From Macrostomum lignano (lineage: Eukaryota): a stretch of 64,000 bases of DNA. Below, piece by piece: positions 7,658 to 63,529 of this stretch. Location: NCBI GenBank assembly GCA_002269645.1, contig NIVC01000262.1, forward strand, positions 313,412-377,411, read 5' to 3'. The position numbers were made by a program, and so were the translations under genes. The stretch's first letter is position 1, and each line of letters starts with the position of its first letter. The notes under the pieces were generated by a model. The model did no database searches and was not told the DNA's origin. It saw only the letters and a list, made by a program, of their open reading frames with translations.

Positions 7658-7712
<55 letters not shown>

Positions 7713-7715
7713 GGC

Positions 7716-7756
<41 letters not shown>

Positions 7757-35699: not shown

Positions 35700-35779
35700 C
35701 TGGGCAGCGGCTGCGTGTGTAAATATTCACTCCAGCTTTGCTCCATTCTAAAATAGACATTCCGAATTCGGATCCAGAT

Positions 35780-41441: not shown

Positions 41442-41529
41442 GTAAGTGCTTTAACTAGTGGATACTGTTGTTGTCTTGCTTATGTGGGATTGACCGCTTC
41501 TTATATTGTGCGAGCAGATTTAAAATTTG

Positions 41530-43875
41530 TGTCAGTAGATTAATAACTTGTGTCAGTAGATTAATGATTTGTGTCAGTGGGTTTATGATTTGTGTCAGTA
41601 GATTTTTATTTGTGTCAGTAGGTTTATGATTTGTGTTAGTAAAGTAATGATTTATGTCAGTAGGTTTATGAATTGTGTCAGTAAATTAATGATTTGTGTC
41701 AGTAGGTTTATGAATTGTGTCAGTAAAGTAATGATTTGTGTCAGTAGGTTTATGAATTGTGTCAGTAAATTAATGATTTGTGTCAGTAGGTTTATGATTT
41801 GTGTCAGTAAAGTAATGATTTGTGTCAGTAGGTTTATGAATTGTGTCAGTAAATTAATGATTTGTGTCAGTAAAGTAATGATTTGTGTCAGTAGGTTTAT
41901 GAATTGTGTCAGTAAATTAATGATTTGTGTCAGTAAAGTAATGATTTGCGTCAGTAGTTTATGATTTGTGTCAGTAAAGTAAGGATTTATGTCAGTAAAG
42001 TAATGGTTTGTGTCAGTAAGTTTATGATTTGTGTCAGTAAAGTAATTATTTGTGTCAGTAGGTTTATGAATTGTGTCAGTAAAGTAATGATTTGTGTCAG
42101 TAAAGTAATGATTTGTGTCAGTAAAGTAATGATTTGTGTCAGTAAAGTAATTATTTGTGTCAGTAGGTTTATGAATTGTGTCAGTAAATTAATGATTTGT
42201 GTCAGTAGGTTTATGATTTGTGTCAGTAAAGTAATGATTTGCGTCAGTAGTTTATGATTTGTGTCAGTAAAGTAATGATTTGTGTCAGTAAGTTTATGAT
42301 TTGTGTCAGTAAAGTAATTATTTGTGTCAGTAGGTTTATGAATTGTGTCAGTAAATTAATGATTTGTGTCAGTAGGTTTATGATTTGTGTCAGTAAAGTA
42401 ATGATTTGTGTCAGTAGGTTTATGAATTGTGTCAGTAAATTAATGATTTGTGTCAGTAGGTTTATGAATTGTGTCAGTAAATTAATGATTTGTGTCAGTA
42501 GGTTTATGAATTGTGTCAGTAAATTAATGATTTGTGTCAGTAAAGTAATGATTTGTGTCAGTTGTTTATGATTTGTGTCAGTAAAGTAAGTATTTATGTC
42601 AGTAGGTTTATGATTTGTGTCAGTAAAGTAATGATTTGTGTCAGTAGGTTTATGAATTGTGTCAGTAAATTAATGATTTGTGTCAGTAAAGTAATGATTT
42701 GTGTCAGTAGTTTATGATTTGTGTCAGTAAAGTAATGATTTGTGTCAGTAAAGTAAGGATTTATGCCAGTAAAGTAATGGTTTGTGTCAGTAAATTAATG
42801 ATTTGTGTCAGTAGGTTTATGATTTGTGTCAGTAAAGTAATGATTTGTGTCAGTAGGTTTATGATTTGTGTCAGTAAAGTAATGATTTGTGTCAGTAGGT
42901 TTATGAATTGTGTCAGTAAATTAATGATTTGTGTCAGTAAAGTAATGATTTGTGTCAGTTGTTTATGATTTGTGTCAGTAAAGTAAGGATTTGTGTCAGT
43001 AAAGTAATGATTTGTGTCAGTAAAGTAAGGATTTATGTCAGCAAAGTAATGATTTGTGTCAGTAAAGTAATGATTTATGTCAGTAAAGTAATGATTTGTG
43101 TCAGTAAAGTAATGATTTGTGTCAGTAGTTTATGATTTGTGTCAGTAAAGTAATGATTTGTGTCAGTAGGTTTATGAATTGTGTCAGTAAATTAATGATT
43201 TGTGTCAGTAAATTAATGATTTGTGTCAGTAAAGTAATGATTTGCGTCAGTAGTTTATGATTTGTGTCAGTAAAGTAAGGATTTATGTCAGTAAAGTAAT
43301 GGTTTGTGTCAGTAAGTTTATGATTTGTGTCAGTAAAGTAATTATTTGTGTCAGTAGGTTTATGAATTGTGTCAGTAAAGTAATGATTTGTGTCAGTAAA
43401 GTAATGATTTGTGTCAGTAAAGTAATGATTTGTGTCAGTAAAGTAATTATTTGTGTCAGTAGGTTTATGAATTGTGTCAGTAAATTAATGATTTGTGTCA
43501 GTAGGTTTATGATTTGTGTCAGTAAAGTAATGATTTGTGTCAGTAGGTTTATGAATTGTGTCAGTAAATTAATGATTTGTGTCAGTAAAGTAATGATTTG
43601 TGTCAGTTGTTTATGATTTGTGTCAGTAAAGTAATAATTTATGTCAGTAAAGTAATGATTTGTGTCAGTAAAGTAATGATTTGTGTCAGTAGTTTATGAT
43701 TTGTGTCAGTAAAGTAATGATTTGTGTCAGTAAAGTAAGGATTTATGTCAGTAAAGTAATGATTTGTGTCAGTAAAGTAATAATTTGTGTCAGTAAAGTA
43801 ATAATTTATGTCAGTAGAGTAATGATTTGTGTTATTAGAGTAATGATTTGTGTTATTAGAGTAATGGTTTGTGTC
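41530..43875. repeat. 21-bp minisatellite, about 2.3 kb, start of BRCA2 intron 4
   Basis: Unit atgatttgtgtcagtaaagta (the MICVSKV pseudo-ORFs). Confidence 0.96.
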
Positions 43876-44080
43876 AATCGATTGTTTGTTTGTGTCACTA
43901 TCTATGTATTTATTAGTGTTTAGTTACATTTATACAAAGTCGCAACAATTTGATTTCGCATTGTCCAGTTTACATGGTGCAAGGTACTGTTGCGTATAAT
44001 AAGCCTGTTTGATCCCTTTGGTGACAAAAGTACATAAGTTAGTAATTTGACTGTTTAGTTCATAGAATTTGCAAGCTAGA

Positions 44081-47000
44081 CTAAAAAATCGTGATGCTCT
44101 TCTTCAAGTTCGCCTCAGCGATTCGATGCAGCACTTCTTTGAACAGGGGCTTCATGCTGTCAATGTCTATGGCCGTGATGAGGTGCGTGTAGATTCTCTT
44201 GGACTTTGGCATGTTCTTCGGTATGAGGCTGGTGAACTTCTCTTTGATGTACTGCGCGCACTGGTTCACCTCGTCGTGGCCTGGAGATTGAGGACGATTG
44301 AGGAGGATCAAACTTGATGTCTCGATTCTGTTTGTTCGTTGTTCCCTATATTAAGGCGATTTTCTCATATATTCAGGGCGATTTTCTTAGATAATCAGGG
44401 CGATTTTGATGGATAATCAGGGCGATTTTGATGGATAATCAGGGCGATTTTGATGGATAATCAGGGCGATTTTGATGGATAATCAGGGCGATTTGCTTGG
44501 ATAATCAGGGCGATTTTGATGGATAATCAGGGCGATTTTGATGGATAATCAGGGCGATTTTGATGGATAATCAGGGCGATTTTGATGGATAATCAGGGCG
44601 ATTTGCTTGGATAATCAGGGCGATTTTGATGGATAATCAGGGCGATTTTGATGGATAATCAGGGCGATTTTGATGGATAATCAGGGCGATTTTGATGGAT
44701 AATCAGGGCGATTTTGATGGATAATCAGGGCGATTTTGATGGATAATCAGGGCGATTTTGATGGATAATCAGGGCGATTTTGATGGATAATCAGGGCGAT
44801 TTGCTTGGATAATCAGGGCGATTTTGATGGATAATCAGGGCGATTTTGATGGATAATCAGGGTGATTTGCTTGGATAATCAGGTCGATTTTCCTGGATAA
44901 TCAAGGTGATTTGCTTGGATAACCAGGGGCGATTTCTCTGAAACATCTCACCTCGATAGTCCGGAAACAGTCCTGTAATACTCTTGGACTTCAACTTCTG
45001 CTCGAACACGTCCAATTTGTTTAAGAACAGAAAGAAATCCTTCTTCCACAGGTACTTGTTGCTGATGATCTCGCTGAATGTTGATAGACAGTCGGACATT
45101 TTAATTGTCTGGAGAATGTACAGATGGATTGTCTGTTTATGACATGATTTATGATGATCAATGATTTAGAAAGACGTGCGTGGTTTCTCACCGTTCTGTC
45201 CTCCTCTTCGACAAGCTCGCCGAAGCCAGACAGAGAGCTGACGAATAGCACTGCGTTGACGTCTTCGAAATAGTGAATCCACTTGTGCCGCTGGCTTCTC
45301 TGGCCTGCCAGATCGATCATGCTGTCGTTTTGAATGAAAATTGGGCGGATTTTTATTGCAGATAAATTGATTGACTTGGCTGATGATATCCAGATGTGAT
45401 GAAAAAGCCAAGGAGGTCGGACACAGATAGACAGGGGGTGCGCACAGATAGGGGTGTACACAGATAGACAGGAGGTGTACACAGATAGACAGGGGTGTAC
45501 ACAGATAGACAGGGGGTGTACACAGATAGACAGGGGGTGTACACAGATAGACAGGGATGTACACAGATAGACAGGGGTGTACACAGATAGACAGGGGTGT
45601 ACACAGATAGGGGGTGTACACAGATAGGGGGTGTACACAGATAGACAGGGGGTGTACACAGATAGACAGGGGGTGTACACAGATGATTCAGATTCAAGGA
45701 GGTGGACACAAAACATTTTAGGGAGTTGAATTTAGGGAATTTAGGGAAACAGACACATTGGAGGCTGGGAGGTGGACACAGCGGATGCAAAAAGGTGGAC
45801 TCAACAGCGACCGGGAAATGGACACAACAGCGACAGAGAGCCGGACACACACAGCGACAGAGAGCTGGACACACACAGCGACAGAGAGCTGGACACACAC
45901 AGCGACAGGAAGATGGACATAACAGCGACAGAGAGGTAGAAACACACAGCGACAGGAAGATGAACACAACAGTGACAGGAAGATGGACACAACAGTGACA
46001 GGAAGATGGACACAACAGTGACAGGAAGATGGACACAACAGTGACAGGAAGATGGACATAACAGCGACAGGAAGATTGACATAACAGCGACAGAGAGGTG
46101 GACACACACAGCGACAGGAAGATGGACACAACAGTGACAGGAAGATGGACATAACAGCGACAGGAAGATGAACACAACAGTGACAGGAAGATGGACATAA
46201 CAGCGACAGGAAGATGAACACAACAGTGACAGGAAGATGGACATAACAGCGACAGGAAGATGAACACAACAGTGACAGGAAGATGGACACAACAGTGACA
46301 GGAAGATGGACACAACAGTGACAGGAAGATGGACATAACAGCGACAGGAAGATTGACATAACAGCGACAGAGAGGTGGACACACACAGCGACAGGAAGAT
46401 GGACACAACAGTGACAGGAAGATGGACATAACAGCGACAGGAAGATGAACACAACAGTGACAGGAAGATGGACATAACAGCGACAGGAAGATGAACACAA
46501 CAGTGACAGGAAGATGGACATAACAGCGACAGGAAGATGAACACAACAGTGACAGGAAGATGGACACAACAGTGACAGGAAGATGAACACAACAGTGACA
46601 GGAAGATGGACACAACAGTGACAGGAAGATGGACATAACAGCGACAGGAAGATGGACATAACAGCGACAGAGAGGTGGACACAGCGGATGCAAAGAGGTG
46701 GACACAACAGTGACAGGAAGGTGGACACAGCGGATGCAACGAGGTGGACACAGCAGCGACCAGTAAATGGACACTACAGCGACAGGGAGGTGGACAAAGC
46801 GAGTACAAAGAGGTGGACACAGAAGCGACAGGAAAGTAGACACAGAACATTCTGCATCCGCTTTAAGCTCACCGAAAAGTGGTGCCAGCAATTTGAAATT
46901 CGGTCTGTCTGACTGCGTCGCTCGGCTTGCGAATGGCCAAAATATCTTGCAGCGTTGGCACATAGTCCTCTTGAATGACGCGATCCACGTGTTGTATAAA

Positions 47001-50000
47001 GCTGTAGATTTATTTAGATTGGTGATCTTTATTTTACAGAGCCTTAAACATTTTAGTAAGTTTTTAGTGTTTTAAGTTAAAATTGTCGCTAACTTGAAAA
47101 CTGTAATCAGACTGATGTTGAATCACCCTTTAGGGCAATGAGAATCACACTTTAGGGCAATGAGAATCACACTTTAGGGCAATGAGAATCACACTTTATG
47201 ACAATGAGAATTACATTTTATGGCAATGAGAATCACCCTTTAGGGCAATGAGAATCACACTTTAGGGCAATGAGAATCACACTTTATGACAATGAGAATC
47301 ACACTTTAGGGCAATGAGAATCACCCTTTAGGGCAATGAGAATCACACTTTAGGGCAATGAGAATCACACTTTATGACAATGAGAATCACACTTTAGGGC
47401 AATGAGAATCACACTTTATGACAATGAGAATCACACTTTAGGGCAATGAGAATCACCCTTTAGGGCAATGAGAATCACACTTTAGGGCAATGAGAATGAC
47501 ACTTTAGGGCAATGAGAATGACACTTTAGGGCAATGAGAATCACACTTTATGGCAATGAGAATCACACTTTAGGGCAATGAGAATGACACTTTAGGGCAA
47601 TGAGAATGACACTTTAGGGCAATGAGAATCACACTTTAGGGCAATGAGAATCACACTTTAGGGCAATGAGAATCACACTTTAGGGCAATGAGAATCACAC
47701 TTTAGGGCAATGAGAATCACACTTTATGGCAATGAGAATCACACTTTAGGGCAATGAGAATCACACTTCAGAGCAATGAGAATGACACTTTAGGGCAATG
47801 AGAATGACACTTTAGGGCAATGAGAATCACACTTTATGGCAATGAGAATCACACTTTAGGGCAATGAGAATGACACTTTAGGGCAATGAGAATCACACTT
47901 TAGGGCAATGAGAATGACACTTTAGGGCAATGAGAATGACACTTTAGGGCAATGAGAATGACACTTTAGGGCAATGAGAATCACACTTTAGGGCAATGAG
48001 AATCACACTTTAGGGCAATGAGAATCACACTTTATGGCAATGAGAATCACACTTTAGGGCAATGAGAATCACACTTTAGGGCAATGAGAATCACACTTTA
48101 GGGCAATGAGAATCACACTTTAGGGCAATGAGAATCACACTTTAGGGCAATGAGAATCACACTTTAGGGCAATGAGAATCACACTTTAGGGCAATGAGAA
48201 TCACATTTTATGGCAATGAGAATCACCCTTTAGGGCAATGAGAATCACACTTTAGGGCAATGAGAATCACACTTTATGACAATGAGAATCACACTTTAGG
48301 GCAATGAGAATCACCCTTTAGGGCAATGAGAATCACACTTTAGGGCAATGAGAATCACACTTTATGACAATGAGAATCACACTTTAGGGCAATGAGAATC
48401 ACACTTTATGACAATTAGAATCACACTTTAGGGCAATGAGAATCACCCTTTAGGGCAATGAGAATCACACTTTAGGGCAATGAGAATGACACTTTAGGGC
48501 AATGAGAATGACACTTTAGGGCAATGAGAATCACACTTTATGGCAATGAGAATCACACTTTAGGGCAATGAGAATGACACTTTAGGGCAATGAGAATGAC
48601 ACTTTAGGGCAATGAGAATCACACTTTAGGGCAATGAGAATCACACTTTATGGCAATGAGAATCACACTTTAGGGCAATGAGAATCACACTTTAGGGCAA
48701 TGAGAATCACACTTTATGGCAATGAGAATCACACTTTAGGGCAATGAGAATCACACTTCAGGGCAATGAGAATGACACTTTAGGGCAATGAGAATGACAC
48801 TTTAGGGCAATGAGAATCACACTTTAGGGCAATGAGAATGACACTTTAGGGCAATGAGAATGACACTTTAGGGCAATGAGAATCACACTTTATGGCAATG
48901 AGAATGACACTTTAGGGCAATGAGAATGACACTTTAGGGCAATGAGAATGACACTTTAGGGCAATGAGAATCACACTTTAGGGCAATGAGAATCACACTT
49001 TAGGGCAATGAGAATCACACTTTATGGCAATGAGAATCACACTTTAGGGCAATGAGAATCACACTTTAGGGCAATGAGAATCACACTTTAGGGCAATGAG
49101 AATCACACTTTAGGGCAATGAGAATCACACTTTAGGGCAATGAGAATCACACTTTAGGGCAATGAGAATCACACTTTAGGGCAATGAGAATCACACTTTA
49201 TGGCAATGAGAATCACACTTTAGGGCAATGAGAATCACACTTTAGGGCAATGAGAATCACACTTTATGGCAATGAGAATCACACTTTAGGGCAATGAGAA
49301 TCACACTTTAGGGCAATGAGAATCACACTTTAGGGCAATGAGAATCACACTTTAGGGCAATGAGAATCACACTTTAGGGCAATGAGAATCACACTTTAGG
49401 GCAATGAGAATCACACTTTAGGGCAATGAGAATCACACTTTAGGGCAATGAGAATCACACTTATGGCAATGAGAATCACACTTTAGGGCAATGAGAATCA
49501 CACTTTAGGGCAATGAGAATCACACTTTATGGCAATGAGAATCACACTTTAGGGCAATGAGAATCACACTTTAGGGCAATGAGAATCACACTTTAGGGCA
49601 ATGAGAATCGCTGCCCTACTGAACTAGTCACTATTGAATATAAAAAAACAGATTAACAATCAAGAGGACAGCTAGACTGTCGGTCAGACCCTCTAAAAAC
49701 AAACGAAGTAACTCACTACATCTCGGCGTAGGTAATCTCCGGCTTGAAGTACTCGTGATCAGCGAGGCACAATTCGAACTCCGGCTGCACAATGCAGTTC
49801 TTTATGTGTCGCACGAAGCAGAACACGATTTCGTCGTGAGGCGGCAAGCCGTCCAGGGTTGACGAGGCGCGCCGACCTCCCGAGGAGCCGGTGTCGTGCG
49901 CGTCGCCTAGGTGAAGGTGCTCAACCAGCCTGGCGCAGCTGCTGTCGGAGCTGCCATCGTCCAGCTGGTTCAGTCCGGCATCCTCTCCGCTCAGGTTTTG

Positions 50001-53000
50001 CAGTTGTTGGCGTCTTTGACGTCTGGAGAATTTGCCAAATTCCAGACTGCTAATGTAGGTCCTGGCCGTGTGCGTCTCTCGCTCACGGTCTCGGTCGTCC
50101 GCTTCGGACTGGCTGTCCTCGAGGCCCTGCGGTGTTTTTATATATCGGATAGAAAGGACCTTGAGTTCAAATTTGTGTCCTTGAGCAAGACACTTTACTC
50201 TGCATTGCTGCAGTTCACCCAGCTGTAAAATGGGTGCCAGTCCTTGGACTGAACAGCCGTACGCAGCCTTTAGAGGCGCCGGGCCGCGCTAAACAAGGAC
50301 AAAAATGTGCATTCACATGCTTGAAATGACCTTATAGTTACATTAATTCACATTTATGAGGACCAAAATGTACTAAGATTTTAATGTGCGCTTGTACAAT
50401 GACCTCATTTAACATGTAGAAGAAAACATGAAGTTCCATTTTTACAACTGAACAGATTGTAAACAGATTATCGATTTCGATTCTAACCTTCAACTATGCC
50501 TAATAAATTAAGTTGGTATGCAATTTATTAGATATTGATTTACGCTCGTAAAAGTTTAAGAGATGATGGATGTGATGAGAGAAGAGATGAGAAAGAAGAT
50601 AAGAGGAGAGGAAATACTCGTAAGAAAGGAGATAAAAGGAGATAGGAGAGAGAATAGAAGAGGCTTTAAAGGAGAGATATGAGAAGACACAAGGCTTGAG
50701 CCGGCCGAATTGCTATTTCAACCATCTCAAACTAAAACACATACTGGTTTTTTATAATCCCGTGGACTTCTTATTCTTTATCTATTTAATACGATGCTCC
50801 AAAAAGACTCATCCGGTGAGACGCGTCTTTCTCACCTGCGTATTATAATAGATTATTAACGAAGCTGACGCCGTGTCGCCTCCGTTGCCGTCCCCACCCG
50901 AAGCCAGTCCGTCAAGTCCGTTCAAGTCTAAGTTGTTTCGCCTGGCCTCTCGGTAGCTAACATCGAATAACAGTAGTTCATGCGCGTTGTCGTGACCGCA
51001 ACTGCTAGGCAGATCGGTGTCAGTCGGCGCCGATGCCAGCGTATCGTCGTCCACAAAATCAACGTGCGCGTAGTGAATGCTGTTCTCAATGTCCACTTGT
51101 TTGCCGGAGTGGCGAAATATTTGACTGTTGAATTTCGGACAGTAGGCTTGGAATTCTTCAACCATGTCCTGGTTGGGTGCGCGATTAACAATGGTCTTAC
51201 ATCTCCGTGTGAGTTGCATTCCATGCGGGGCCACAGAATTCGTGTCTGGTGTATGAATATTTGCCTGGGGCTTGTTCAAGAGAACCAACTCCAAAACCCT
51301 GGCACTGAGGAAGTGAGCCCTTGAATTTTTGCGGTTCCCTAAAGCCACAGCTACACAAGTACAGAGACATGAGGGGCGCACTAAAGATGCACTGCAGCCC
51401 CGACTTTGTCTGCCATGGGTCGAGCAAAAATATCCCAATATGTGGATTCAAATTTGATGTAGCTACGCCTGGAATCGAGCGAAAGCCTTCTGGCCCAAGT
51501 CCTCTGATAGATAATTTCTAGAATTTCGAAAAAGTCCCTTTGACCAACAACAGCTGCAATCAAACTTTGATGTAGAATAAAAAACCGCTACCTTCCTACC
51601 TTGATGTAGGGATCGTGAAACCAGATGTCCCTAGTGCGCATATTCTCCAGCACAATGTGCACCGCATCTGCTAGATTCTCCAGCACCTGACCGATCAGCG
51701 CCTTGCGTTGCTCGTCCGGGAATGCGTCTCCGTAGTGAATTCGAAACTGTTTCACTAACGTACTCTTGCCGCATCCGTTGCCGCCTAAGTTAATGTCAAA
51801 AAGTGAAATCTGGATTAAACGTTAATATACGTTTTGGTTGAAAAAAACTTGGCAGTTAAAAAATCTAAAGGAATAGCGCTATGTAACGGATAATATGAAT
51901 GAATACTGTCATTTTAATTTCATAAAATTAAACTTAAATTAAACTTCAGCATAAACTTAAACTTAATAGTGAGACACTCTTTTATTGATAGACACACTTA
52001 TAGACTGTATACACATTTTAGCCTGTCGAGAGACGCACTACAGATGCCGTGAGACACGTTCCGAACTCTCAAAAGGGCACTTTAGACTGAGGTAAAAACA
52101 CTTTGTCGAGAGACACACTTCAGATTGCGACAGACACACTTCATGCTGTGGTAGACACACTTCATGCTGTGGTAGACACACTTCAGGCTGTGGTAGACAC
52201 ACTTCAGGCTGTGGTAGACACACTTCAGGCTGTGGTAGACACTTCAGGATATGGTAATCACACTTCAGGATATGGTAGACACACTTCAGGATATGGTAGA
52301 CACACTTCAGGCTGTGGTAGACACACTTCAGGCTGTGGTAGACACACTTCAGGCTGTGGTAGACACACTTCAGGCTGTGGTAGACACACTTCAGGATATG
52401 GTAGACACACTTCAGGCTGTGGTAGACACACTTCAGGCTGTGGTAGACACACTTCAGGCTGTGGTAGACACACTTCAGGCTGTGGTAGACACTTCAGGCT
52501 GTGGTAGACACACTTCAGGCTGTGGTAGACACACTTCAGGCTGTGGTAGACACACTTCAGGCTGTGGTAGACACACTTCAGGCTGTGGTAGACACACTTC
52601 AGGATATGGTAGACACACTTAAGACGTCGAGGTATTTGGAATTATTAGATGTTTAAGAAAGAAACTGTTTTAACGTGTGTCGTGTTGTACTAGAGTAAAA
52701 AACAAACCAATCAGCAGCAGGTGAATCTCCTTGCGCTTGGCTTCCTGGTCAGTCAGCAACAGCTGGTCAATTTGCTTCGAACGCATCAGAGCCCTCTTCT
52801 GAGCCAGCTTGTTGATGCTGTTAAAATGATCCGATATCTGTAAGAAGTTTTGATGCGAGTTGAATAAGAGATCTCTAAGTCCTCAGCGGGTGTCTCTTGC
52901 GTGTACCCAGGTATCTGCCAACCAGACGTGAGTTGACGGGAGAAGGACTGTTTGGCGCTTTTTAAATCCTCTGCAGAAACCGGCTCGTAACTCGAGCCGT

Positions 53001-54387
53001 CATCATTTCCTTAACACACTGAATTTGGCATTTCGCACTATAGATTGTTGGAATCGAAGAATAGGGAAGAAAACTACGAGCTAGTTGGTATTCCCAACCA
53101 CTACTCATTTTCCTAAGCACCCCACGCCGAATTTATTCCAATATATATTTGCTTATCTTCTAATCAAATATAGCTATAATGCGTGCCATAACTCAAAATA
53201 GAAAATTTAGTACTGGATAATTGAATTTCAATCGCAATTAGGGAACAAGCGTTGTTATATGCTTATAAAAATATGCGCGTTTCCCATCCTTTTTTCATAG
53301 TCAATTTCTTTATCTCTTCTTCAGCATAATTGGGCGCCCCAATGTTCTATAGGGGAATTAATACGGCCGAGCAATTGATAGTTTTGAAAAAGAATTGTTT
53401 GATTGCAATCTTATTGACTTGTATTCATATTTGATCATTATTTATAGTTACAGTCGGCTACAGCTACCTACCAGTGATGAAATGACATTGAGAACTTATC
53501 CCTACTGACATCTCAACCTTCATCCCTAATGAAATCTCGTCTTTATTGATATTGAATCTCCACTGAGCTCTTATATTCACGGAAGTATAATCTTTACCTT
53601 CACCTTAACTCTATTTCTTTCTCATGTTATCTACTAATATCTGATCTCTAGTGAGATCTCATCTCTACTATCATGGCATCTTCACTGACAGCTTTTTATT
53701 ACACCTGCCTTAATAGGCAGATGTAGCTCGTACAACCGGCCATTGTGGCACGCATCTGAAGGCTGTTTGCGGCTGTTGAGTCTAAAATCTGTGGTTTGCC
53801 ATCGCCACACAAGCCCTCAATTACCCCAGGTAATGCTGTCATCCATTTTACAGCTGGGTGAACTGAAGCAATGCAGAGTTGAGGTGTCTTTCTCAAAGAC
53901 ACAAGTTGTTCCGAGTGGGTCGAGAACCGAATCCCCTAACCAGTAGGCTACAACCCCCCCCCCCTCTGCTTGATGCACATCTTGTGGCCTCCGATCTACT
54001 TACTTTTTTACTTGTGTGCCTCTTGGACGATGCGATAGCAACCAGACTGGCCTTCTTAGCCAGCACCCGTCTGCCTCCAGCCACTCCGCCGCTGCCGCTC
54101 CCGCCGCCACCATGGCTCGAAAATCTCTTGCTTCCGCCAATAACTGTACCGGCTCTTCTTAGCTTTCTCCTTCGCTTGTTGTTGCTGCTGCTGCTGTTTG
54201 AGGCTGCCGCTGGTGCCGATGCTGTTGCTGACAGTGCCGTAGTGACTGCAGCCGTCGATGAAGAAGTTGAAGCCTCCTCTACTATGGTAGCATCGATCGT
54301 GTCTCCTTGTGTCACCGTCGGCTTTTGCTGCTTCCATTCGTCGTCGTCTTTTGGTACGAGGCAGATTCGTTCCTCATTGTCGCTCAT
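44081..54387 (-). CDS. Divergent extra-large heterotrimeric G-protein alpha subunit, 9 exons, about 717 aa, nested antisense in BRCA2 intron 4
   Basis: Exons (-): 54387-54004, 52837-52708, 51784-51600, 51264-50836, 50126-49717, 47001-46873, 45321-45192, 45108-44952, 44280-44081. All GT-AG, phases match, total 2154 nt = 718 codons including stop. Motifs: RSKQID, LLLIGGNGCGKST, YVPTLQDILAIRKPS, DLAGQRSQRHKWIHYFEDVNAVLFV, FLNKLD, IYTHLITAID, ANLKKSITIF*. Confidence 0.88.
44370..44930. repeat. 22-bp minisatellite, G-alpha intron 8
   Basis: Unit cgattttgatggataatcaggg. Confidence 0.95.
45420..46840. repeat. Two adjacent minisatellites (20-21 bp and 23 bp), G-alpha intron 6
   Basis: gtacacagatagacagggg(g)t at 45420-45685; acacaacagtgacaggaagatgg at 45765-46840. 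Confidence 0.92.
47120..49608. repeat. 22-bp minisatellite containing TTTAGGG, about 2.5 kb, G-alpha intron 5
   Basis: Unit cactttagggcaatgagaatca, on the order of 110 copies. Confidence 0.97.
50165..50290 (+). mobile_element. CORE-type SINE fragment with internal deletion
   Basis: tgtgtccttgagcaagacactttactctgcattgctgcagttcacccagctgtaaaatgggtgccag joined directly to tccttggactgaacagccgtacgcagcc. Confidence 0.7.
52105..52622. repeat. 21-bp minisatellite, G-alpha intron 2
   Basis: Unit cacacttcaggctgtggtaga. Confidence 0.94.
53705..53940 (-). mobile_element. CORE-type SINE copy, diverged, 5'-truncated
   Basis: Plus strand reads ...ccattttacagctgggtgaactgaagcaatgcagagttgaggtgtctttctcaaagacaca, the reverse complement of the CORE segment. 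Confidence 0.7.
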
Positions 54388-55121
54388 CTTTGCGGAGGAA
54401 ATCCGACAGCTGGTTTAGTGGGCTGGCCAGCTCTCGTTTGTAAACTGTATTGCCGGTGTCAGATTACAGCGGATTTTCCTGCCGCAATGCTAAAATATTA
54501 AAGGCCATTTGTTGGCTGCGTCTCAAGGCCTATCACACCAGCTTTCGATTTTATTCGCCCGTGCTCGACTGTGTGTACCTTCGACTGACGCACCTCGTCC
54601 TTCCTTTTTTCCTTTTCTTCCCCTTTCTCCCTCGTGTCAAGGAGGCCCACAGCTAGAACTTGGCGTGCTAGGATTGAGTAAACAAATAAAAACGCAAAAA
54701 ACAAGAACCTTCCTCTATCCCAGTCTGCGAGTTTCTGACTGTTTCGAGTCATTTTGTTTGAACTTTTAAGTATAAAGTACTTAAATCTGGAGGTGTAAAA
54801 ATTGGATTGGTTCAGATTAGAAACTAAAGTGTGTAGAAAATCATGCCAAAAACACAGAGAAAACATTTTAAAATGACAGTGTGGTAATTGGGACATGCCA
54901 AGGTTCGTGTGGGAAATGCTGAGATGTCAAGGCTCATTGGGGGGAATTGCTGAAATTCTGTGGCTCTTGGTGGTTACTCAGATGTTTTGAGCCAAAAAAA
55001 CTCATAGGGAATCTCATATCTTCAGCTAGATAGCTGTTTCTCAAGACTGATGCTGCTTTCCTTTAAACATCATTTTCCTGAAGAGATTAGCAATACGCTC
55101 GTACTGACTTGACTGTACTAC

Positions 55122-55392
55122 GGCTGTTGTAGCCTAGTGGTTAGAGCGTCGGACTCACAATTTGAAGGTCAGGGGTTCGATTTCCGATCCCACTGAAACA
55201 ATTTGTGTCCTTAAACAAGACACTTAACTCTGCATTGCTTCAGTTCACCCAGCTGTAAAATGGGTGCCAGCATTAGCTGGGGTAATTGAGGCTGTGTGTG
55301 TGGCGACTCCCCAGTCCTTGGACTGAACAGCCGTACGCAACCTTCAAATGCGCCGCGAAATAGCTGCGGCTGAGCTGTCGGTTGCACATCAA
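55122..55392 (+). mobile_element. tRNA-derived CORE-type SINE, near full length
   Basis: A box tagcctagtggttagagcg, B box ggttcgatttcc, then tgtgtccttaaacaagacacttaactc...cagctgtaaaatggg resembling the MIR/CORE domain. Homologous copies elsewhere in the window. Confidence 0.75.
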
Positions 55393-56883
55393 AATACTTA
55401 CATGTAGTTACTTACATATAGTTTACTCAAAACTGTTATTCCTTTCTTTGTTGCGTCACCAACAGAAGGAGCGCAGATTGCTAGTTCCTTAAACACAATT
55501 AACTGCATTCTGAGCAATATAAATGCGACCTAGTAATAAAAGAGAAGTTAAAAGACACTAAGCTACAATCAAGTTTTATAGTTGTCCAAAAATGTAAGGC
55601 TTGAATAAGAGTTGTCAGTCCAAGTTCTGAGTCTCCTTGCCCTCTCCCAACCACCTCCTCATTCTTATGCACTGTCATTATCTCCCATTGAAAAGCAAAC
55701 CGAACAAAATTCAATCCCAAGCCCCTGCAGTCTTCTCCCTTCTATGTATTATTATATACACGCTCGTATATAAATCAGTGCCTCTTTGCAACCAATCAAC
55801 TCTTCGAACCGGTCGAAGCTCTGGAATTTGGTGCCTCCGCATTTTACTTTCTTCTATCTCTATCATTCCTATTCTATTTGAGTCTATACTGCTCAGAATC
55901 CCTATATATCACCCCTCACCATTTGCCTCTGGCCTATTCATTTCCGCCTTATTCTCATTCGGAACTTCACATTCCCCAGTTTCTTATAATTGCTCACTCG
56001 CTCTCTCTCTATCCGATCTAGCTCCTGTTGGTCTCTCTCTCTCTTTCTTTCCCATTTATGGCTCCCCCTCCCAACGATAAGATGGGACAGCGCGAGTTTG
56101 GTGGCTTCAACCTCTATAGCTATGGGCATTTTAATCAAACTGCCAATGCGCTCAAGACTTTCGAATATAGAATCTATATAGTTCTTATAGTATAAGTGTG
56201 AGCGCTATCGATGCCGCGATTGAATGGGTCCTATCTATCTCACTACTGTCTGACACTTTGCCTCCATTCGATTCATTAACCCCCCCTCCCCCATAGCAAC
56301 CCCAAACTTCGTCGCTCGGCTTCTTATCGACAGGCAAATTAATCTTCTCCCTCTACGGCAAGAGAGAAGGACGATCGGTCTTATATGGAACTGGAGCTGG
56401 GATTCTGTGTTTAGCGACTGGGGCCGCTTCATCATCATCTTGTTTAAAGTACCCACTGTCTTAAATTTTCATTTAAAACCAACCAAGTGTAAAAACTATT
56501 ATTCACTTGTTTATATTTTTTCTAGAAAAATTGACAAGAACTTTTCCTGTTAGTCTGTTACAAAGCTGTCTGTTAAAAAATTGAAAATTATATTGTATCA
56601 TTTAGCTTAATGTTATTATAGAGAATAAATAAACTTAAAACAATACTGTATGTTTTACGTACAGTTTTTACTTTAGAAAAAATAATCTTTGTCTCAGTAA
56701 GATATCGCTTAAATTCTAGGATTTCTCGTTCTGTGCAAACAGTTACAAAGTTCTTGTGGGCCGTATTAACGAAGGAGGGCAGTGCTAAACAAAAACTATT
56801 CACAACTTTTAAAAAGTTATTGAAATTCACTGTTATTTGATAATAATAGTTAGGATGCGTCTTCATCATCGGCCATGGTTTCC

Positions 56884-59800
56884 TCACTTGACTGACAGCG
56901 GGTTTCTCTTAGTATTGGCCCTCTCGTTCGTCGGTCTCTGCCGATACTCCACCCCGATGCCGTCCACGACCGCCCGATTCTTGCGCGTCTCCGTCTGGCT
57001 CTCCTCGCCCAGAACCCGGCGACCCTCCTCGCTGACGACCTCCTGCGTGACCGTGAGAAGTTTCAGCATCTTATTAATCTTTAGAATTCTAGCCACCTCT
57101 TTGCAAGCTCTCGTGTCCATTGGCACCTGGCGTAAGAATAGCTTCTCAAGCTTGTTATTAATTTTCAGCGCTTCGGATAGAGAGAAGAAGCAGACATTGT
57201 CCAGGCGGATTCCGCTCAAATCCAGCAGGACAATGGTCCGATTGCTAGAGAATGCGGCGATGAAAGTGTTAAAGGCCATCGCATCAATCTTGAGGTTAGC
57301 CAAGATCAGGCCTTCTAGACTCTTGCTCTCCATCAGCTTTCCGTTGAGATCCTGCGATGCCACTATGCTCATCTGGCAGCCAGAAAAGTCTAGAATGCGC
57401 AGGTTGTCCGCAAATTTAGTTGGCAAATTTTTTATTATGCTTCCAACCAGCGACATGTGGTGACAATTTTGAAATGCGAACGTTTCTAGTTTAGTCATGT
57501 TCGAGCAGGCTTCGCGCATGTTGTTTAGCATTTTTGGCGACAACTGGTCCAGCTTCTTTCCTGACTCGTCGATGCACTCAAGATTCTTCAGATGAAAGCC
57601 GGTCTGATCGGGCTTCTTACGCCTGATTTCCATCTGGCCTGTAGAATTGGCGGGGTCCTCTGGCTCCGGACAGCACACGGTTTGAAGGAAGTCTGCCATT
57701 AGATCCTTCTCTGTCCAGTAGATGCGGAGCGTCTTGATGTGAACGTTCGTTTTCATTGCGGTAGCCAGACTTTTGTATGCCTCAAGCGTCTCTTTGGCTA
57801 GCAGATCTAGGCGCAAGTCCACCTCTTGGATGGTCGTGTGGTTAAACTTGATCATCTTGGACAGGCCTGTAAGCGACAATCTCGGAATGATGCCCTCGTG
57901 CTTCACGGTGAATCGCTCTGGCAGCGATTCAACAATTTTCTTGCCAAGATCTCTGCGGGCCATGTCCATGACCGCCACGCATTCCAGACTGAGCTGGTAG
58001 TCCATGATCTTGCCCTCGACCAGTTGACTGTCTTCTGGCGACGTAGCCGCTGGCATTTTCATGCGACTCGCTTTGCCTCGCCGTTTGTTATACTGCAGTA
58101 TCTTTGCAAACAGTTCCCGGGTGGCCGGCGTGTCGTTGTCCGACTTGCGGATGCTGCAGTAGAACACAACAACATTGTAGGAGATCGGAGTCATACTCAT
58201 GTTCTGGAAGAAGCGGCTAGCTTCATCTGTTCCACTAGTGTCTAGATTTTTCGCGGCGAGATACTCTTGAATAAGACGATTGCCAAACATGTAGCGCTGG
58301 TTATCCTCTGCGGTGAGGTTTGTAGCCAGTTGAATCAGGCCGAACTTAGTCATCATGTGGTCCTCCTTGGCCAAAATGAAAGTTGCGCTGCCTTTCTTTA
58401 TGGTGTCCATAGCGCGTTCGGACAGCATTGCGTAGGCGCGATTCGCTTCGAAGCGACTCTCCTTTTCGCGTTCGATCAGCTTCAACTTGATGCAGGAGAC
58501 AAACTGTTCCACAATTGTTGTCGGAGAGTTCAGATCGATACTCATGCGCATGTCGGTCAGCAGGCAGAAGAACGAACAGTACAAAGGCACCTGTGAGTAA
58601 TGTCGCAGGGACGCTATTTTGCTTTGATTTGAATTTTCACCGTTTGAATCCTGTTGTTGCTGCTGATCGTTTCCTTGACCCTTGCTAGAGCTGCGGCTTA
58701 GTTTTGTGCTGACTTTGTCCGTGTTTTCCCTCTCCAAAGGTCGCTCGTCTCTGGGCTTTGCCGAGGTCACAGATGTCGCCGATTCTGACGACCCGCGTCG
58801 CCTCTGCGGCTCCTGCGACTTTTTCGCTGCATCCAGCAGCTTTTGAAGCTCAGTTGATTTTTTTGCCACTACTAGCTTGTTTAGAAACGAGGAAAAGTGT
58901 TCCCACGGCTTCTTAGCTAGTTTGACGTACTTCTGAACGTACTCCTCTGCCTGGGATTTGGCGAATCCGGTCAGAATTACCTTGCGCTGGTAGCGGTGCA
59001 TCAGTCTGACTGTAAAGTTAGTCTGACTAAATACCAGAATGTGCAGTTCCGGCATGATGTTCTCAAATAGCAAACTCTTCATCTCATCATTTAGATTGTC
59101 TTCGTAGCCATCTATGATGAGCAGTGTGCTCGCCTGGTGCATGTTCATCACCTCCCAAATTTCGCGTTCGGCCAGCTTGCAGTCGCCTCCGAAAAGCTGT
59201 TCCATCATCATCACTTTCACTGTGGGCGCTGTTACTTTAAGATCAAGCAAGATTAGCAGTTGGAAAGGCCGTCCGAATACGTTTTCGTCCAAAGACCATT
59301 TGTAGGCCATATACTTAGCCAGCGTACTCTTCCCTGTTCCAGGGTCACCCTCAATAACTACTGTATGCGGGTCTTTTTCGCCTTCCTTATAATCAAAAAC
59401 TTGGAAGGCGTTGACTGACTTTCTGCAATTTTAAATTGAGAAATCAAAGTTGAAAATTATGTCTTGCTTAATGATCTGATCTGTTTTCCTGCTACTTACC
59501 CATTCAAATTGAGCAGCTGCTGTTGGCAGTAGAATTCGGCAATGTCTGTTTCAACTTTAGTGTACCATGGAATCGGATTCCATTTGGCGTACGCGGTGGA
59601 GTACCGCTCTCGAAGAATGTTGTTACAGTAAGGTAGACCCTCTGAAGAAACAGAAGAAACAGAAAAATCCTGTGATCAACTCTTAGAAGAGGATTTACTA
59701 ATTATTATAAATACTTACGTGGTTTATTAGCAAGGATGTCGGCCTTAGCGGCCTGGTAGTCCTGGTGCATCTGCTGGTACACCTGTTCGTTCTTGGGTTT

Positions 59801-60970
59801 CAGCGATTCAACGAACTCATCCAACACATTGCCAGATTTTGGCACTAGAAAGTCGATCAACGTCGACATCTGCTCGTTGTTGCGCAGAGTAGAAAATATT
59901 TCCGTGCTCTCGTCTTGGGTAATAATCTCCTTGTTCATCAGATGCTCAACCACTGTGTCCGCTTTTACATCGTTGAGCAGCTGTTCGTAGTACTTGTCGA
60001 GAATTAGGCGCTCCGCTAATACCATGCCAGTTTTGATATGAGCCCATCTATGACAGCGCGACTTGTCGCTCATGTCCATCGTCGCCTTTCCAACAACCGA
60101 CTGGCGTTTTTCGTTTCCGACGTGTCCAAATCGCGCGTCTTGAGCCGTTTCTGCAGAATAGGAATCTCTTCGCGCTTCTTCTTTCGTTCTTGGTTTTCGA
60201 TTTCTCTCTTCAACTGGCTGACCTCTTGGCGGTACCAGACGAGGAATTCGCCCAGAATGAAGCGCGATTCAGTCTCGTCCATGCTAGTGTCCTGCTTGTA
60301 TGCGTTCATACAGTCTGCTGCACCCGAGTGTCCCAGTCGCTGGAGCTGCTCGGCAATGCGGCTAAACAGTCTGTTAGCCGCGCTCGCCTTTAAGGTCTGC
60401 AGCGAGGCGAGCTCGCGTTGAATGCCCAGTAGGCGTTGCAGCGCTGCGCCCTGGCTGTCATCGCGAGGTTCCGGATCTCCCATCCAGCCGTTTGGCTGCG
60501 GCTTCGTCACATCGCAGGTGTATTTTACTAACAGGAGCAGCAGACGCAGGTCGTAGTTGTCAGCGGACACGGAAGATTTCTCCTTCGGGTAGAGCGTCTG
60601 CCAGTCGTCTTCGGTTAGCATGTCTTTGATCTTAAGTCGCCTCAGCGTCCGGTGAATGTCCGGCGAGGCCAAGTGTTCCGTTAGCTCGTCCGTTGGATGC
60701 TTGGAATCGAATAGGCTTCTCAAGCACGCCTTGCCCTCTCGCATGAGAAAGTGGCACACTCTGGATAGGTTCTCTACGCTCCTCTCGTCGGTCATGTCCA
60801 ACTGCAGCTTGGGCGTGTTGTCTACCACGCCGAACTGAAATTTTGGATGTCATTAACCAATGTTAAAATGCAGCATTTTAGTAAAGTATCCAACAGTTAG
60901 ACAGTTAGTAACTCACAACCACTTGATTTTTCGGCCGAGCGGCCAAGGTCATTCGACGAACTTCTGGCAT
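56884..60970 (-). CDS. NLR: HEPN(DZIP3-like)-coiled coil-CARD-NACHT-LRR, about 1283 aa if the frame break is repaired; nested antisense in BRCA2 intron 4
   Basis: Exons (-): 60970-60917, 60834-59719 (one base short of phase), 59641-59500, 59422-56884; introns 82, 77, 77 nt. HEPN-like WQTLYP...YDLRLLLLL...GWMGDP...D.S; CARD-like LILDKYYEQLLNDVKADTVVEHLMNKEIIT; pre-NACHT RERY...PIPW; Walker A VVIEGDPGTGKST; Walker B LLIIDGYED; FGNRLIQEYLAA; RI-like LRRs. Confidence 0.85.
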
Positions 60971-61611
60971 CCTCAGCTGTGAGCTGCAGGTTTTCTGTCA
61001 GCTTCTGTTAAGCTCAGATTTCAACTACTCAGATATTGGGCTTTAGTCTTTACTCTAAACTTCTATCTTCGTTAGCAGGTGAAAAAGCATGAAGATTTAA
61101 GAATTTTTCTCTTTCTCTTGCTCTTCTGCTCAAGCGCACTTGCAGCCCAGCCCTCCTTGTTGAGTAGCTCTGGAAAGCTCTGAGCTCTATTGTTAGTCCG
61201 TCTCTTATGCCCTCGACACCCCCGTTAGATTCGAATAGCTCTGTGCTCTGTGCGCTGGAGACATGAAAGCTGTTAAAAGGCGGTGCGCGTTGCGTACTTT
61301 GAATGCATCTGTTCTCAAATATTTTCATTCTACTCTGCAGAGATTTGCTGCGTGTGCAAAGATGTGGCTGTCTACTGTGTTTCTTCTGCTACCATTTTGC
61401 GCTGAGGAGTTTGTCTTATAAGACGCAAAATGGTAGAACAATAAAAATGCTCCTGCGTGTGTACGAGGGGGTCTATTCTATCTTACAGACTCAGTTTTGT
61501 TGCCAAGGTGATGCAACACACTCTCGCGTACACACTTCTACGTACAATGTACTGACCCTCTGTTGCACTTTGTCTCCTGTGGCATATATTTATTGTATAT
61601 TACTTGCACTC

Positions 61612-61890
61612 TGTAGCCAGTGGTTGGAGCGTCGGACTCACGACTTGAAGGTCGGGGGTTCGATTCCTGATCTCACCGGAACGATTTGTGTCCTTTAGCA
61701 AGACACTAAACTCTGCGTTTCTTCAGTTCACCCAGCTGTAAAATGGGTGCCAGCATTAGCTGGGGTAATTGAGGCTGTGTGTGGCGACCCCCCCCCCCAG
61801 GTCCTTGGACTGAACAGCCGTACGCAGCCTTCAGATGCGCCGCGCAATATCTGAGGCTGAGCTGTTGGTTGCACATCTGCCCATTTAGGG
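61612..61890 (+). mobile_element. tRNA-derived CORE-type SINE copy
   Basis: tagccagtggttggagcgtcggactc...ggttcgattcc...tgtgtcctttagcaagacactaaactc...cagctgtaaaatgggtgccagcattagctgggg; collinear with 55122-55392. Confidence 0.75.
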
Positions 61891-62072
61891 CAGGTGTAAT
61901 CAATTATAGTTTTATTATTGTGCTTTATAATTGTCTGAAAGCTGAAAATTTTATTAGCGCACAATTCGTACTTAGGGACAAATTAGCAGAGTCTTGCTCG
62001 AACAATATAAAAATTCGATTTCGGCTCAACAAAATGAACCAAGATATTACTGCTTATTCCTCCATCAACCAG

Positions 62073-63517: not shown

Positions 63518-63529
63518 GTTGGTGGCTGC

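What the first reader, a model, noticed from the sequence alone, without database searches (positions are those of the whole stretch)
41442..62072. One 20.6-kb BRCA2 intron hosts two complete antisense genes (XL G-alpha and an NLR)
Seen: BRCA2 exon 4 ends ...GH-CG|gtaagt at 41441 and resumes ccag|A-CCC at 62073 (RPCIRRILERD), giving a correct phase-2 join between the helical domain and OB1. Between them lie a 10.3-kb G-alpha gene and a 4.1-kb NLR gene, both on the minus strand. Inference: BRCA2 transcription must run through a signalling gene and an immune receptor gene, which suggests mutually exclusive expression, transcriptional interference or dsRNA formation. I know of no such arrangement for BRCA2, but I could not search the literature.
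Basis: partly seen in the sequence, partly recalled or inferred. Interest (0 to 1): 0.7.

Follow-up and report, generated by a model that had tools for sequence, protein, structure and literature searches.

The report
Two genes nested in flatworm BRCA2 intron
In the flatworm Macrostomum lignano, one unusually long BRCA2 intron really does contain two opposite-strand genes (a very divergent G-protein alpha subunit and a CARD-NACHT-LRR immune-type receptor), but genes nested in introns are common in animals and nothing here shows that the three genes regulate each other.

Summary
Confirmed but ordinary. The window is Macrostomum lignano assembly Mlig_3_7, scaffold NIVC01000262.1 (100% match).

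- **The splice join:** joining 41441 to 62073 is a correct phase-2 join. The joined peptide aligns without gaps to rat and mouse BRCA2 across the junction. GenBank's transcript-derived BRCA2 model (PAA86838.1, 1354 aa) contains the same join.
- **The intron:** it is 20,631 bp with no Ns.
- **G-alpha gene:** it is unannotated and lies on the minus strand at 54387-44081. It has 8 GT-AG exons, 574 aa and a full-length Pfam G-alpha match. No known protein is more than about 32% identical.
- **NLR gene:** it lies on the minus strand at 60970-56884. In this copy a 1-nt shorter A-run puts the HEPN domain out of frame.
- **Misjoin refuted:** a second gapless contig (NIVC01004146.1) shows the same gene order, and three further contigs show parts of it.
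- **Age of the intron:** Nematostella BRCA2 has an intron in the same codon and phase, about 288 bp long. So an old intron was enlarged here.

Nested genes occur in 12-17% of mammalian genes, usually in the longest intron. Mutual exclusion, transcriptional interference and dsRNA remain untested speculation. The "XL" label is not supported. The window ends at a scaffold gap that is followed by redundant sequence.

The parts
37962..40670 (+). BRCA2 coding exons 1-3 (about 37962-38126, 38995-39177, 39309-40670). Exon 3 carries four BRC repeats.
   Evidence: tblastn of the public model P0045 (PAA86838.1) on L004, converted to window coordinates. Pfam BRCA2 repeat found 4 times, E=1.6e-31.
41056..41441 (+). 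BRCA2 exon 4 (end of the helical domain). Its donor is CACCG|gtaagt, phase 2.
41442..62072 (+). BRCA2 intron 4, the host intron: 20,631 bp, GT...AG, no Ns. About 35% is minisatellite arrays and about 27% is coding sequence of the two nested genes.
   Evidence: The Nematostella BRCA2 intron is in the same codon and phase.
41524..43876 (.). 21-bp minisatellite (112 copies) between BRCA2 exon 4 and the 3' end of the G-alpha gene.
   Evidence: TRF. It is shorter in copy B, where exon 4 and the G-alpha stop are about 1.3 kb apart.
44081..54387 (-). Nested gene 1: a divergent G-protein alpha subunit of 574 aa in 8 exons (54387-54004, 52837-52708, 51784-51600, 50126-49717, 47001-46873, 45321-45192, 45108-44952, 44280-44081). 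An AATAAA lies 167 nt after the stop. It is not in the public annotation.
   Evidence: All introns are GT-AG with consistent phases and the reading frame is open throughout. Pfam G-alpha E=2.5e-79, covering profile positions 3-331 of 333. About 30% identity to Gq, Gi and Go structures. The reading frame is intact in copy B. Exons are 13 times less diverged than unique intron sequence. Poly(A) signal.
47120..49609 (.). 22-bp minisatellite (113 copies) inside G-alpha intron 4. Contig NIVC01003379.1 ends inside the equivalent array.
54388..56883 (.). Spacer between the two nested genes. It contains one copy of a SINE-like element (55128-55383).
   Evidence: No Rfam family and no tRNA found.
56884..60970 (-). 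Nested gene 2: an NLR with HEPN(DZIP3-type), CARD, NACHT and ribonuclease-inhibitor-type LRR domains. Exons: 60970-60917, 60834-59719, 59641-59500, 59422-56884. In this copy the A-run at 60107-60111 is 1 nt short. The public model here therefore starts at the ATG at 60079 (1013 aa, CARD-NACHT-LRR).
   Evidence: Pfam HEPN_DZIP3 1.2e-18, CARD 9.6e-10, NACHT 2.3e-15. LRR shown by PDB hits to ribonuclease inhibitor (1e-8) and to NLRP14 and NLRP5. Public models P0041 and P0039. Frameshift. Splice sites.
60971..62072 (.). Region upstream of the NLR gene, which is also the 3' end of the host intron. It holds a SINE-like element (61591-61870) and the BRCA2 acceptor ...tccatcaaccag|A.
62073..62217 (+). 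BRCA2 exon 5 (start of OB1).
63059..63517 (+). BRCA2 exon 6 (rest of OB1 and start of the Tower domain). The window then ends at 64000, exactly at a 1,475-N scaffold gap.

Best explanation
This is a real but ordinary host/nested gene arrangement in Macrostomum lignano.

An ancient phase-2 BRCA2 intron sits at the boundary between the helical and OB1 domains. Its position is shared with the cnidarian Nematostella, where it is about 288 bp. In this flatworm it has grown to 20.6 kb. It now holds two opposite-strand protein-coding genes lying head to tail. One is an NLR (HEPN-CARD-NACHT-LRR). Downstream of it lies a very divergent G-protein alpha subunit. The intron also holds about 7 kb of minisatellite arrays and SINE-like elements.

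Shown: the join, the gene order, the intact reading frames and the same order in other copies of the locus.

Inferred: RNA polymerase II transcribing BRCA2 reads through the whole block and the spliceosome removes it as one intron. The nested genes use promoters of their own inside the intron.
For: - **Source of the window:** it equals NIVC01000262.1 at 100% identity. Window position w is record position w+313,411.
- **The join:** it is validated by Pfam and by a gapless alignment to solved BRCA2 structures. The public 1354-aa BRCA2 model contains ...VLGHRPCIRRILERD.... That annotation was built from RNA-seq-guided transcript assemblies using StringTie, TACO and TBONE (PMC5730564).
- **Public nesting:** the same annotation places the NLR model inside the BRCA2 range on the opposite strand.
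- **Copy B:** NIVC01004146.1, reconstructed from L003 and L005, has no Ns and differs from the window by about 1-4% outside the tandem arrays. It has BRCA2 exons 1-4, then G-alpha on the minus strand, then the NLR on the minus strand, then BRCA2 exons 5-6. Its intron is 17.0 kb.
- **Partial copies:** NIVC01000871.1 shows exon 4, the array and the G-alpha 3' exons. NIVC01004236.1 and NIVC01004237.1 show the BRCA2 3' exons, the NLR and the G-alpha 5' exons.
- **G-alpha gene:** 8 GT-AG exons, a full-length Pfam match and a poly(A) signal. Between copies A and B the exons differ at 4 of 1725 nt. Unique intron sequence differs at 95 of 3150 nt (Fisher p=6e-14).
- **Age of the intron:** Nematostella has its intron in the same Arg codon and the same phase.
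- **Intron size:** the mean M. lignano intron is 1.1-1.4 kb, so this one is an outlier. Its content accounts for the length.
Against: - No RNA reads could be examined directly. Support for the splice join rests on a transcript-derived public model.
- The G-alpha gene has no model in any public protein set, so its expression is unproven.
- All contigs come from one PacBio read set of a line with known extra chromosomes and 180 Mb of duplicated blocks. The 'independent' copies are paralogous or allelic loci within one assembly, not independent assemblies.
- The scaffold has an artefact just past the window end. This shows that local assembly quality is imperfect.
Confidence: 0.87

Rival explanations
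1. Assembly misjoin or chimera. The two BRCA2 halves come from different copies or haplotypes, and the G-alpha/NLR block was joined in wrongly at a tandem array.
For: The genome is rich in repeats and partly duplicated. Two long arrays lie at or near the suspected joins. A scaffolding artefact lies immediately after the window: a 1,475-N gap followed by a 99.2% identical repeat of window 59560-64000.
Against: - The window has no Ns.
- A second gapless contig repeats the whole order, and three more repeat overlapping parts.
- The same misjoin would have to have arisen several times in copies that differ by 1-5%.
- Divergence between copies is higher on the left (about 95-97%) and lower on the right (about 98-99%) for every pair compared. 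This argues against a switch between haplotypes.
Confidence: 0.03
2. Only one nested gene is functional. The G-alpha is a silent or decaying relic, and in this copy the NLR is also damaged by a frameshift. The arrangement would then have little biological meaning.
For: There is no public protein or transcript-derived model for the G-alpha, whereas BRCA2 and the NLR both have one. It is only about 30% identical to any known G-alpha. It has unusual P-loop and G5 residues and no Gly2. The NLR in this copy has a 1-nt homopolymer deletion.
Against: - The G-alpha reading frame is intact over 8 exons in two copies, with all splice sites canonical.
- Its exons are 13 times less diverged than its introns.
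- The catalytic Arg and Gln and the NKxD motif are kept.
- The GenBank gene set excluded transcripts that overlap repeat annotations, which could explain why this gene is absent.
- The NLR indel lies in an A-run in a PacBio assembly and may be a sequencing error.
Confidence: 0.2
3. One reading: BRCA2 transcription and the nested genes antagonise each other, through transcriptional interference, dsRNA or mutually exclusive expression, as a selected regulatory device.
For: The geometry allows it: the strands are opposite, the nested genes lie wholly inside the intron, and the order is kept in all copies examined. Interference between host and nested genes has been reported for some pairs (abstracts of PMC3192792 and PMC11694760).
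Against: Nothing in the sequence shows it. The copies are recent duplicates, so a shared order says nothing about selection. Surveys of mammalian pairs find no general mutual exclusion, and co-expression occurs in single cells.
Confidence: 0.1
4. The NLR and the G-alpha form one transcription unit. They would be a polycistronic precursor resolved by spliced-leader trans-splicing, and so would work as a module.
For: They lie on the same strand, head to tail and 2.5 kb apart. No AATAAA or ATTAAA occurs within 600 nt after the NLR stop. Almost 7% of M. lignano transcripts are multi-gene precursors.
Against: No read evidence is available. The public NLR model ends on its own. In one copy (NIVC01000870.1) the sequence 120 bp after the NLR stop is replaced by unrelated sequence that looks like a transposon.
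Confidence: 0.1

Closest known systems
Host/nested (intronic) gene pairs of animals, for example MCPH1/ANGPT2 in mammals and tim2/2mit in Drosophila
   Same: Protein-coding genes lie wholly inside one intron of an unrelated host gene. That intron is the host's longest, and the nested genes are on the opposite strand. The host in the mammalian example is also a DNA-damage-response gene (PMC11694760; PMC3786989 abstract).
   Different: Here two nested genes share one intron. The host is BRCA2, for which the paper search found no report of nesting. Conservation beyond copies within this one genome is unknown.
Heterotrimeric G-protein alpha subunits of the Gq and Gi/o classes
   Same: The G-alpha domain is full length (Pfam 2.5e-79). 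The GxxxxGKS P-loop, switch-I Arg, DxxGQ with the catalytic Gln, and NKxD are all present. The tail ends ...NLKKSITIF, similar to Gi/o.
   Different: Identity to any class is only about 30%. The P-loop reads GGNGCGKS, switch II reads DLAGQ (as in Ras) and G5 reads ITAI instead of TCAT. There is no Gly2 for myristoylation. There is a roughly 135-aa low-complexity N-terminal extension and a roughly 85-aa insert in the helical domain. No class could be assigned.
XL-alpha-s (mammals) and XLG proteins (plants), the 'extra-large' G-alphas
   Same: It is longer than a standard G-alpha because of extra N-terminal sequence.
   Different: The extension is much shorter and low in complexity, with no Pfam domain (protein 6). 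No similarity to the N-terminal regions of those proteins was seen or tested. The label 'XL' is descriptive only.
Animal NLRs (NOD and NLRP type), and invertebrate STAND proteins that carry DZIP3-type HEPN domains
   Same: CARD, NACHT and ribonuclease-inhibitor-type LRR occur in the usual order.
   Different: There is an extra N-terminal DZIP3-type HEPN domain. The nearest relatives outside its own 50%-identity cluster are full-length proteins at 23-30% identity and short fragments at up to 49%. 28 cluster representatives reach E<=1e-30. Pfam's own LRR models do not reach threshold.

Membership tests
Host/nested gene pair | The nested gene lies wholly within one intron of the host | tested here: met
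   G-alpha 44081-54387 and NLR 56884-60970 both lie inside intron 41442-62072. In the public annotation the NLR lies inside the BRCA2 range.
Host/nested gene pair | The flanking host exons are joined in mRNA | tested here: met
   This is indirect. The transcript-derived GenBank model PAA86838.1 contains the join, and the join aligns gaplessly to BRCA2 structures. Raw reads were not examined.
Host/nested gene pair | The nested genes are transcription units of their own | tested here: inconclusive
   The NLR has transcript-derived models. The G-alpha has an intact reading frame, conserved exons and a poly(A) signal, but no transcript model.
BRCA2 | BRC repeats plus a helical / OB1 / Tower / OB3 DNA-binding domain | tested here: met
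   Four BRC repeats (E=1.1e-29), helical 5.3e-10 and OB1 1.4e-30. OB3 (7.4e-4) and Tower (0.013) fall below the curated cut-offs. E about 1e-50 to 1iyj and 1miu.
Heterotrimeric G-alpha | Full G-alpha domain with the G1-G5 nucleotide-binding motifs | tested here: met
   Pfam PF00503 267 bits, profile 3-331 of 333. G1 GGNGCGKS, switch-I R-K-P-S, G3 DLAGQ, G4 NKLD, G5 ITAI. Several positions carry unusual residues.
Heterotrimeric G-alpha | N-terminal lipid anchor (Gly2 myristoylation and/or an early Cys) and assignment to a class (Gs, Gi/o, Gq, G12, Gv) | tested here: inconclusive
   The N-terminus is MSDNEERIC...: no Gly2, with a Cys at position 9. Scores against Gq, Gi and Go structures are nearly equal. 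No phylogeny was made.
Extra-large G-alpha (XL-alpha-s / plant XLG) | A long, family-specific N-terminal region | tested here: not met
   Exon 1 encodes 128 aa of low-complexity sequence with no Pfam match. The total length is 574 aa.
NLR | A central NACHT NTPase followed by C-terminal LRRs, with an N-terminal effector domain | tested here: met
   NACHT 2.3e-15 and CARD 9.6e-10. LRR by phmmer to ribonuclease inhibitor (1e-8) and to NLRP14 and NLRP5 (1.4e-5). Pfam LRR models gave no hit.
NLR | One uninterrupted reading frame in this copy | tested here: not met
   HEPN and CARD are in different frames because the A-run at 60107-60111 is 1 nt shorter than in L001, L002 and L003. The CARD-NACHT-LRR part (1013 aa) is intact.

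The most novel reading that the evidence does not exclude
The NLR and the orphan G-alpha form a linked sensor-and-signalling module. Placing it antisense inside BRCA2 would couple it inversely to BRCA2 transcription: off in BRCA2-high dividing stem and germ cells, on in differentiated cells. In that case the nesting would be a selected regulatory switch and not an accident of intron growth.
Probability: 0.05. Interest if true: 0.55.

Novelty: new member of a known kind. Interest (0 to 1): 0.2.

Why it matters
Mostly it matters for annotation.

- It adds an unannotated, very divergent G-alpha gene to the M. lignano gene set.
- It shows that GenBank's separate 527-aa 'hypothetical protein' on NIVC01000870.1 (PAA75636.1) is a BRCA2 C-terminal fragment.
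- It flags a scaffolding artefact that duplicates BRCA2 exons 5-6 in NIVC01000262.1.

It also gives a clean example of an intron conserved since the cnidarian-bilaterian ancestor growing about 70-fold by taking in genes and minisatellites. Anyone planning BRCA2 knock-outs or promoter work in this model should know that two other genes lie inside the locus. It does not bear on BRCA2 biology in general.

Tried and rejected
- **Raw intron to Pfam:** giving the raw intron as a DNA reference failed because of stop codons. Exons were found instead from stop-free segments, PDB alignments and splice-site reading.
- **Close relatives of the G-alpha:** none was found above 32% identity.
- **CEP162-like neighbour:** It was reached instead through the listing of cluster members.
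- **RNA genes:** tRNA and Rfam scans of the intron found nothing. The tRNA-like stretch at 61600-61670 is part of a SINE-like repeat.
- **Literature:** a search for BRCA2 together with 'nested gene' found nothing relevant. A search for flatworm NLRs gave no statement on Macrostomum.
- **dN/dS for the G-alpha:** only 4 differences exist between copies (2 synonymous, 2 not), so it is uninformative. The exon-versus-intron contrast was used instead.
- **Apparent 5.9-kb tandem duplication of BRCA2 exons 5-6:** I first read this as real. I rejected that once the 'spacer' proved to be 1,475 Ns and other copies showed single exons.
- **Human intron position:** I recall human BRCA2 intron 17 lying about 10 codons upstream of this position. 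This is from memory only, was not tested and is not used.
Full report
**Source of the window.** A search with the joined BRCA2 peptide returned a Macrostomum lignano protein at 100% identity. Contig look-ups then placed the window on scaffold NIVC01000262.1 of assembly Mlig_3_7 (GCA_002269645.1). Locus L004 positions 1-36039 equal window 27962-64000 at 100.000% identity, so window position w is record position w+313,411. Mlig_3_7 is a Canu assembly of PacBio reads, polished with Pilon and scaffolded with SSPACE. The sequenced line DV1 carries extra large chromosomes, and the assembly holds 180 Mb of duplicated blocks at 95% identity or more. Tandem repeats make up 15% of the genome. The mean intron is 1.1-1.4 kb (PMC5730564).

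**Check of the observation.** The exon ends ...GGACACCG|gtaagt at 41441 and the next exon begins ...caaccag|ACCCTGC at 62073. Joining 41053-41441, 62073-62217 and 63059-63517 gives an open 331-aa peptide.
- Pfam finds BRCA-2_helical on residues 56-124, BRCA-2_OB1 on 131-257 (E=1.9e-31) and a weak Tower match.
- phmmer aligns the peptide to the rat and mouse BRCA2 DNA-binding domains at E about 1e-50. 'QLRYRYDREFVLGHRPCIRRILERD' lies opposite 'QLKYRYDVEIDNSSRSALKKILERD' with no gap.

So the join is right and no coding exon is hidden in the intron. The public BRCA2 model PAA86838.1 (P0045, 1354 aa) contains the same join. It maps to nine exons, and the exon ending at 41441 is the fourth. GenBank's gene set for this assembly derives from RNA-seq-guided transcript assembly. 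That gives indirect RNA support for the splice.

**Contents of the intron.** The intron is 20,631 bp with no N.
- About 7.2 kb is minisatellite. This includes a 21-bp array at 41524-43876 and a 22-bp array at 47120-49609.
- Four copies of a SINE-like element lie at about 50171-50284, 53751-53936, 55128-55383 and 61591-61870.
- No tRNA and no Rfam family is present.

**Nested gene 1, the G-alpha.** I built an eight-exon model on the minus strand: 54387-54004, 52837-52708, 51784-51600, 50126-49717, 47001-46873, 45321-45192, 45108-44952 and 44280-44081.
- Every intron is GT-AG with a good consensus, the phases fit, and the product is 574 aa.
- Pfam G-alpha matches at E=2.5e-79 over profile positions 3-331 of 333.
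- The best solved structures (Gq, Gi, Go) and the best of 5.8 billion database proteins are only 29-32% identical.
- No M. lignano protein set contains this gene.
- The nucleotide-binding motifs are present but unusual: GGNGCGKS, R-K-P-S, DLAGQ, NKLD and ITAI.
- The extra length comes from a 128-aa low-complexity first exon and an insert in the helical domain. Neither has a Pfam match. 'XL' is therefore only a description.
- An AATAAA lies 167 nt after the stop.

**Nested gene 2, the NLR.** Its exons are 60970-60917, 60834-59719, 59641-59500 and 59422-56884 on the minus strand.
- The domains are DZIP3-type HEPN, CARD and NACHT.
- The C-terminal LRRs match ribonuclease inhibitor (1e-8) and NLRP14 and NLRP5.
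- Public models exist. They are 1283 aa on other contigs and 1013 aa (CARD-NACHT-LRR) on this scaffold.
- The shorter model has a clear cause. In the window the A-run at 60107-60111 has five A's where three other copies have six, which throws HEPN out of frame. In a PacBio assembly this may be an error or a real lesion.
- Apart from its own 50%-identity cluster, the nearest full-length relatives are 23-30% identical and short fragments reach 49%. 28 cluster representatives reach E<=1e-30.

- Contig NIVC01004146.1 was rebuilt from L003 and L005. Their 915-bp overlap is identical and there are no Ns.
- It carries BRCA2 exons 1-4, all eight G-alpha exons on the minus strand, the NLR on the minus strand, and then BRCA2 exons 5-6. 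Its intron is 17.0 kb, and the length difference lies in the arrays.
- NIVC01003379.1 is the same copy: 3 mismatches in 14 kb.
- NIVC01000871.1 shows exon 4, the array and the G-alpha 3' exons.
- NIVC01004236.1 and NIVC01004237.1 show the BRCA2 3' exons, the NLR and the G-alpha 5' exons.
- These copies differ from the window by 1-5%, so they are separate loci or alleles. A misjoin would have had to recur in each.
- One copy, NIVC01000870.1, departs 120 bp after the NLR stop into sequence with a ULP-protease/PHD-like reading frame. This is probably a transposon.

**Is the G-alpha alive?** Between the window and copy B the coding sequence differs at 4 of 1725 nt (2 synonymous, 2 not), and the frame is intact in both. 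Unique intron sequence of the same gene differs at 95 of 3150 aligned nt (Fisher p=6e-14). This fits constraint on the exons.

Two cautions apply. Synonymous sites are also very similar, and the assembly was polished with RNA-seq reads, which could have made exons more alike. The GenBank gene set excluded transcripts that overlap repeat annotations, which may explain why this gene is missing. Expression remains unproven.

**Age of the host intron.** In Nematostella vectensis the BRCA2 gene has an intron at ...CAC AG|gtataa...tttctcag|G TCT. This lies inside the same Arg codon (H-R|S-A-L-K-K-V-L-E-R-D) and in the same phase 2, and it is about 288 bp long. The intron is therefore old. The flatworm lineage enlarged it about 70-fold.

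**An artefact next to the finding.** The window ends exactly where the scaffold has 1,475 Ns. After the gap comes a 99.2% identical repeat of window 59560-64000, which holds the NLR 5' exons and BRCA2 exons 5 and 6. Other copies have these exons once. Including both copies would shift the frame, because 145+459 nt is not a multiple of three. This is best read as two overlapping contig ends that the scaffolder joined with a gap. It does not touch the intron in question.

**Comparison with what is known.** Host/nested pairs are common. 17% of human and 12% of mouse genes host another gene. About 75% of nested genes sit in one intron, usually the largest, with only a slight excess on the opposite strand. 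Co-expression in single cells occurs alongside cases of mutual exclusion (PMC11694760). One conserved example also has a DNA-damage-response host, MCPH1/ANGPT2. I found no paper on nesting in BRCA2. However, the NLR-in-BRCA2 nesting is already visible in GenBank.

**Verdict.** The functional interpretation is untested speculation. The finding is a new example of a well-known arrangement. Its by-products are an unannotated orphan G-alpha gene, a probable frameshift or sequencing error in the NLR, and a scaffolding artefact. Interest is low.

Noticed in passing
window 64000 and beyond (L004 36040-41954): The window ends exactly at a 1,475-N scaffold gap in NIVC01000262.1. After the gap lies a 99.2% identical repeat of window 59560-64000, which holds the NLR 5' exons and BRCA2 exons 5-6. 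Other copies have these exons once. This is probably an SSPACE artefact from overlapping contig ends.
   Followed up: yes
window 60107-60111: This A-run is 1 nt shorter than in three other copies of the NLR gene. It puts the HEPN domain out of frame with CARD-NACHT-LRR. It may be a PacBio homopolymer error or a real frameshift.
   Followed up: yes
window 50171-50284, 53751-53936, 55128-55383, 61591-61870: Four copies of a SINE-like element with a tRNA-like stretch. ARAGORN and Rfam call nothing there. All four copies in the 64-kb window lie inside the host intron.
   Followed up: partly
L007 3582-3950 (Nematostella DS469722.1): Nematostella BRCA2 has an intron in the same Arg codon and the same phase as the host intron, but it is only about 288 bp long.
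   Followed up: yes
L001 1-3499 (NIVC01000870.1): In this copy the sequence from 120 bp past the NLR stop is unrelated to the window. It carries a reading frame with ULP-protease-like and PHD-finger-like motifs, recognised by eye and not scanned against Pfam. It is probably a transposon insertion or a rearrangement. The same scaffold has a second BRCA2-3'/NLR copy at its end (L010).
   Followed up: partly
L001 10001-13800: GenBank's 527-aa 'hypothetical protein' PAA75636.1 is a BRCA2 C-terminal fragment that starts inside exon 6. BRCA2 is annotated in full on only one of the copies.
   Followed up: partly
window 6044-6259, 35774-36370, 38310-38975, 40702-40950, 63532-63962: Related 28-31-bp minisatellites (unit about CCAGTTGCTGGGCCAGACTCCCAGATCC) recur in several BRCA2 introns, in the spacer upstream of BRCA2 and in another gene. 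Nearly every intron in the window is filled with some tandem array.
   Followed up: no
window 1301-9015 (-), 14675-16336 (-), 28152-29457 (+), 31515-35699 (+): Neighbouring genes are a DENN-domain protein, a single-exon amiloride-sensitive (DEG/ENaC) channel, ARPC5 (p16-Arc), and a coiled-coil protein that UniRef names for a related cluster member as CEP162. The coiled-coil CDS is annotated as 5'-partial, starting one codon after an ATG at 31512.
   Followed up: partly
L002 20320-20731; L008 16349-16737: In other copies, G-alpha exon 4 (L002, a 2-nt gap) and exon 1 (L008, a split HSP) show small indels. These are probably PacBio errors but were not resolved.
   Followed up: no
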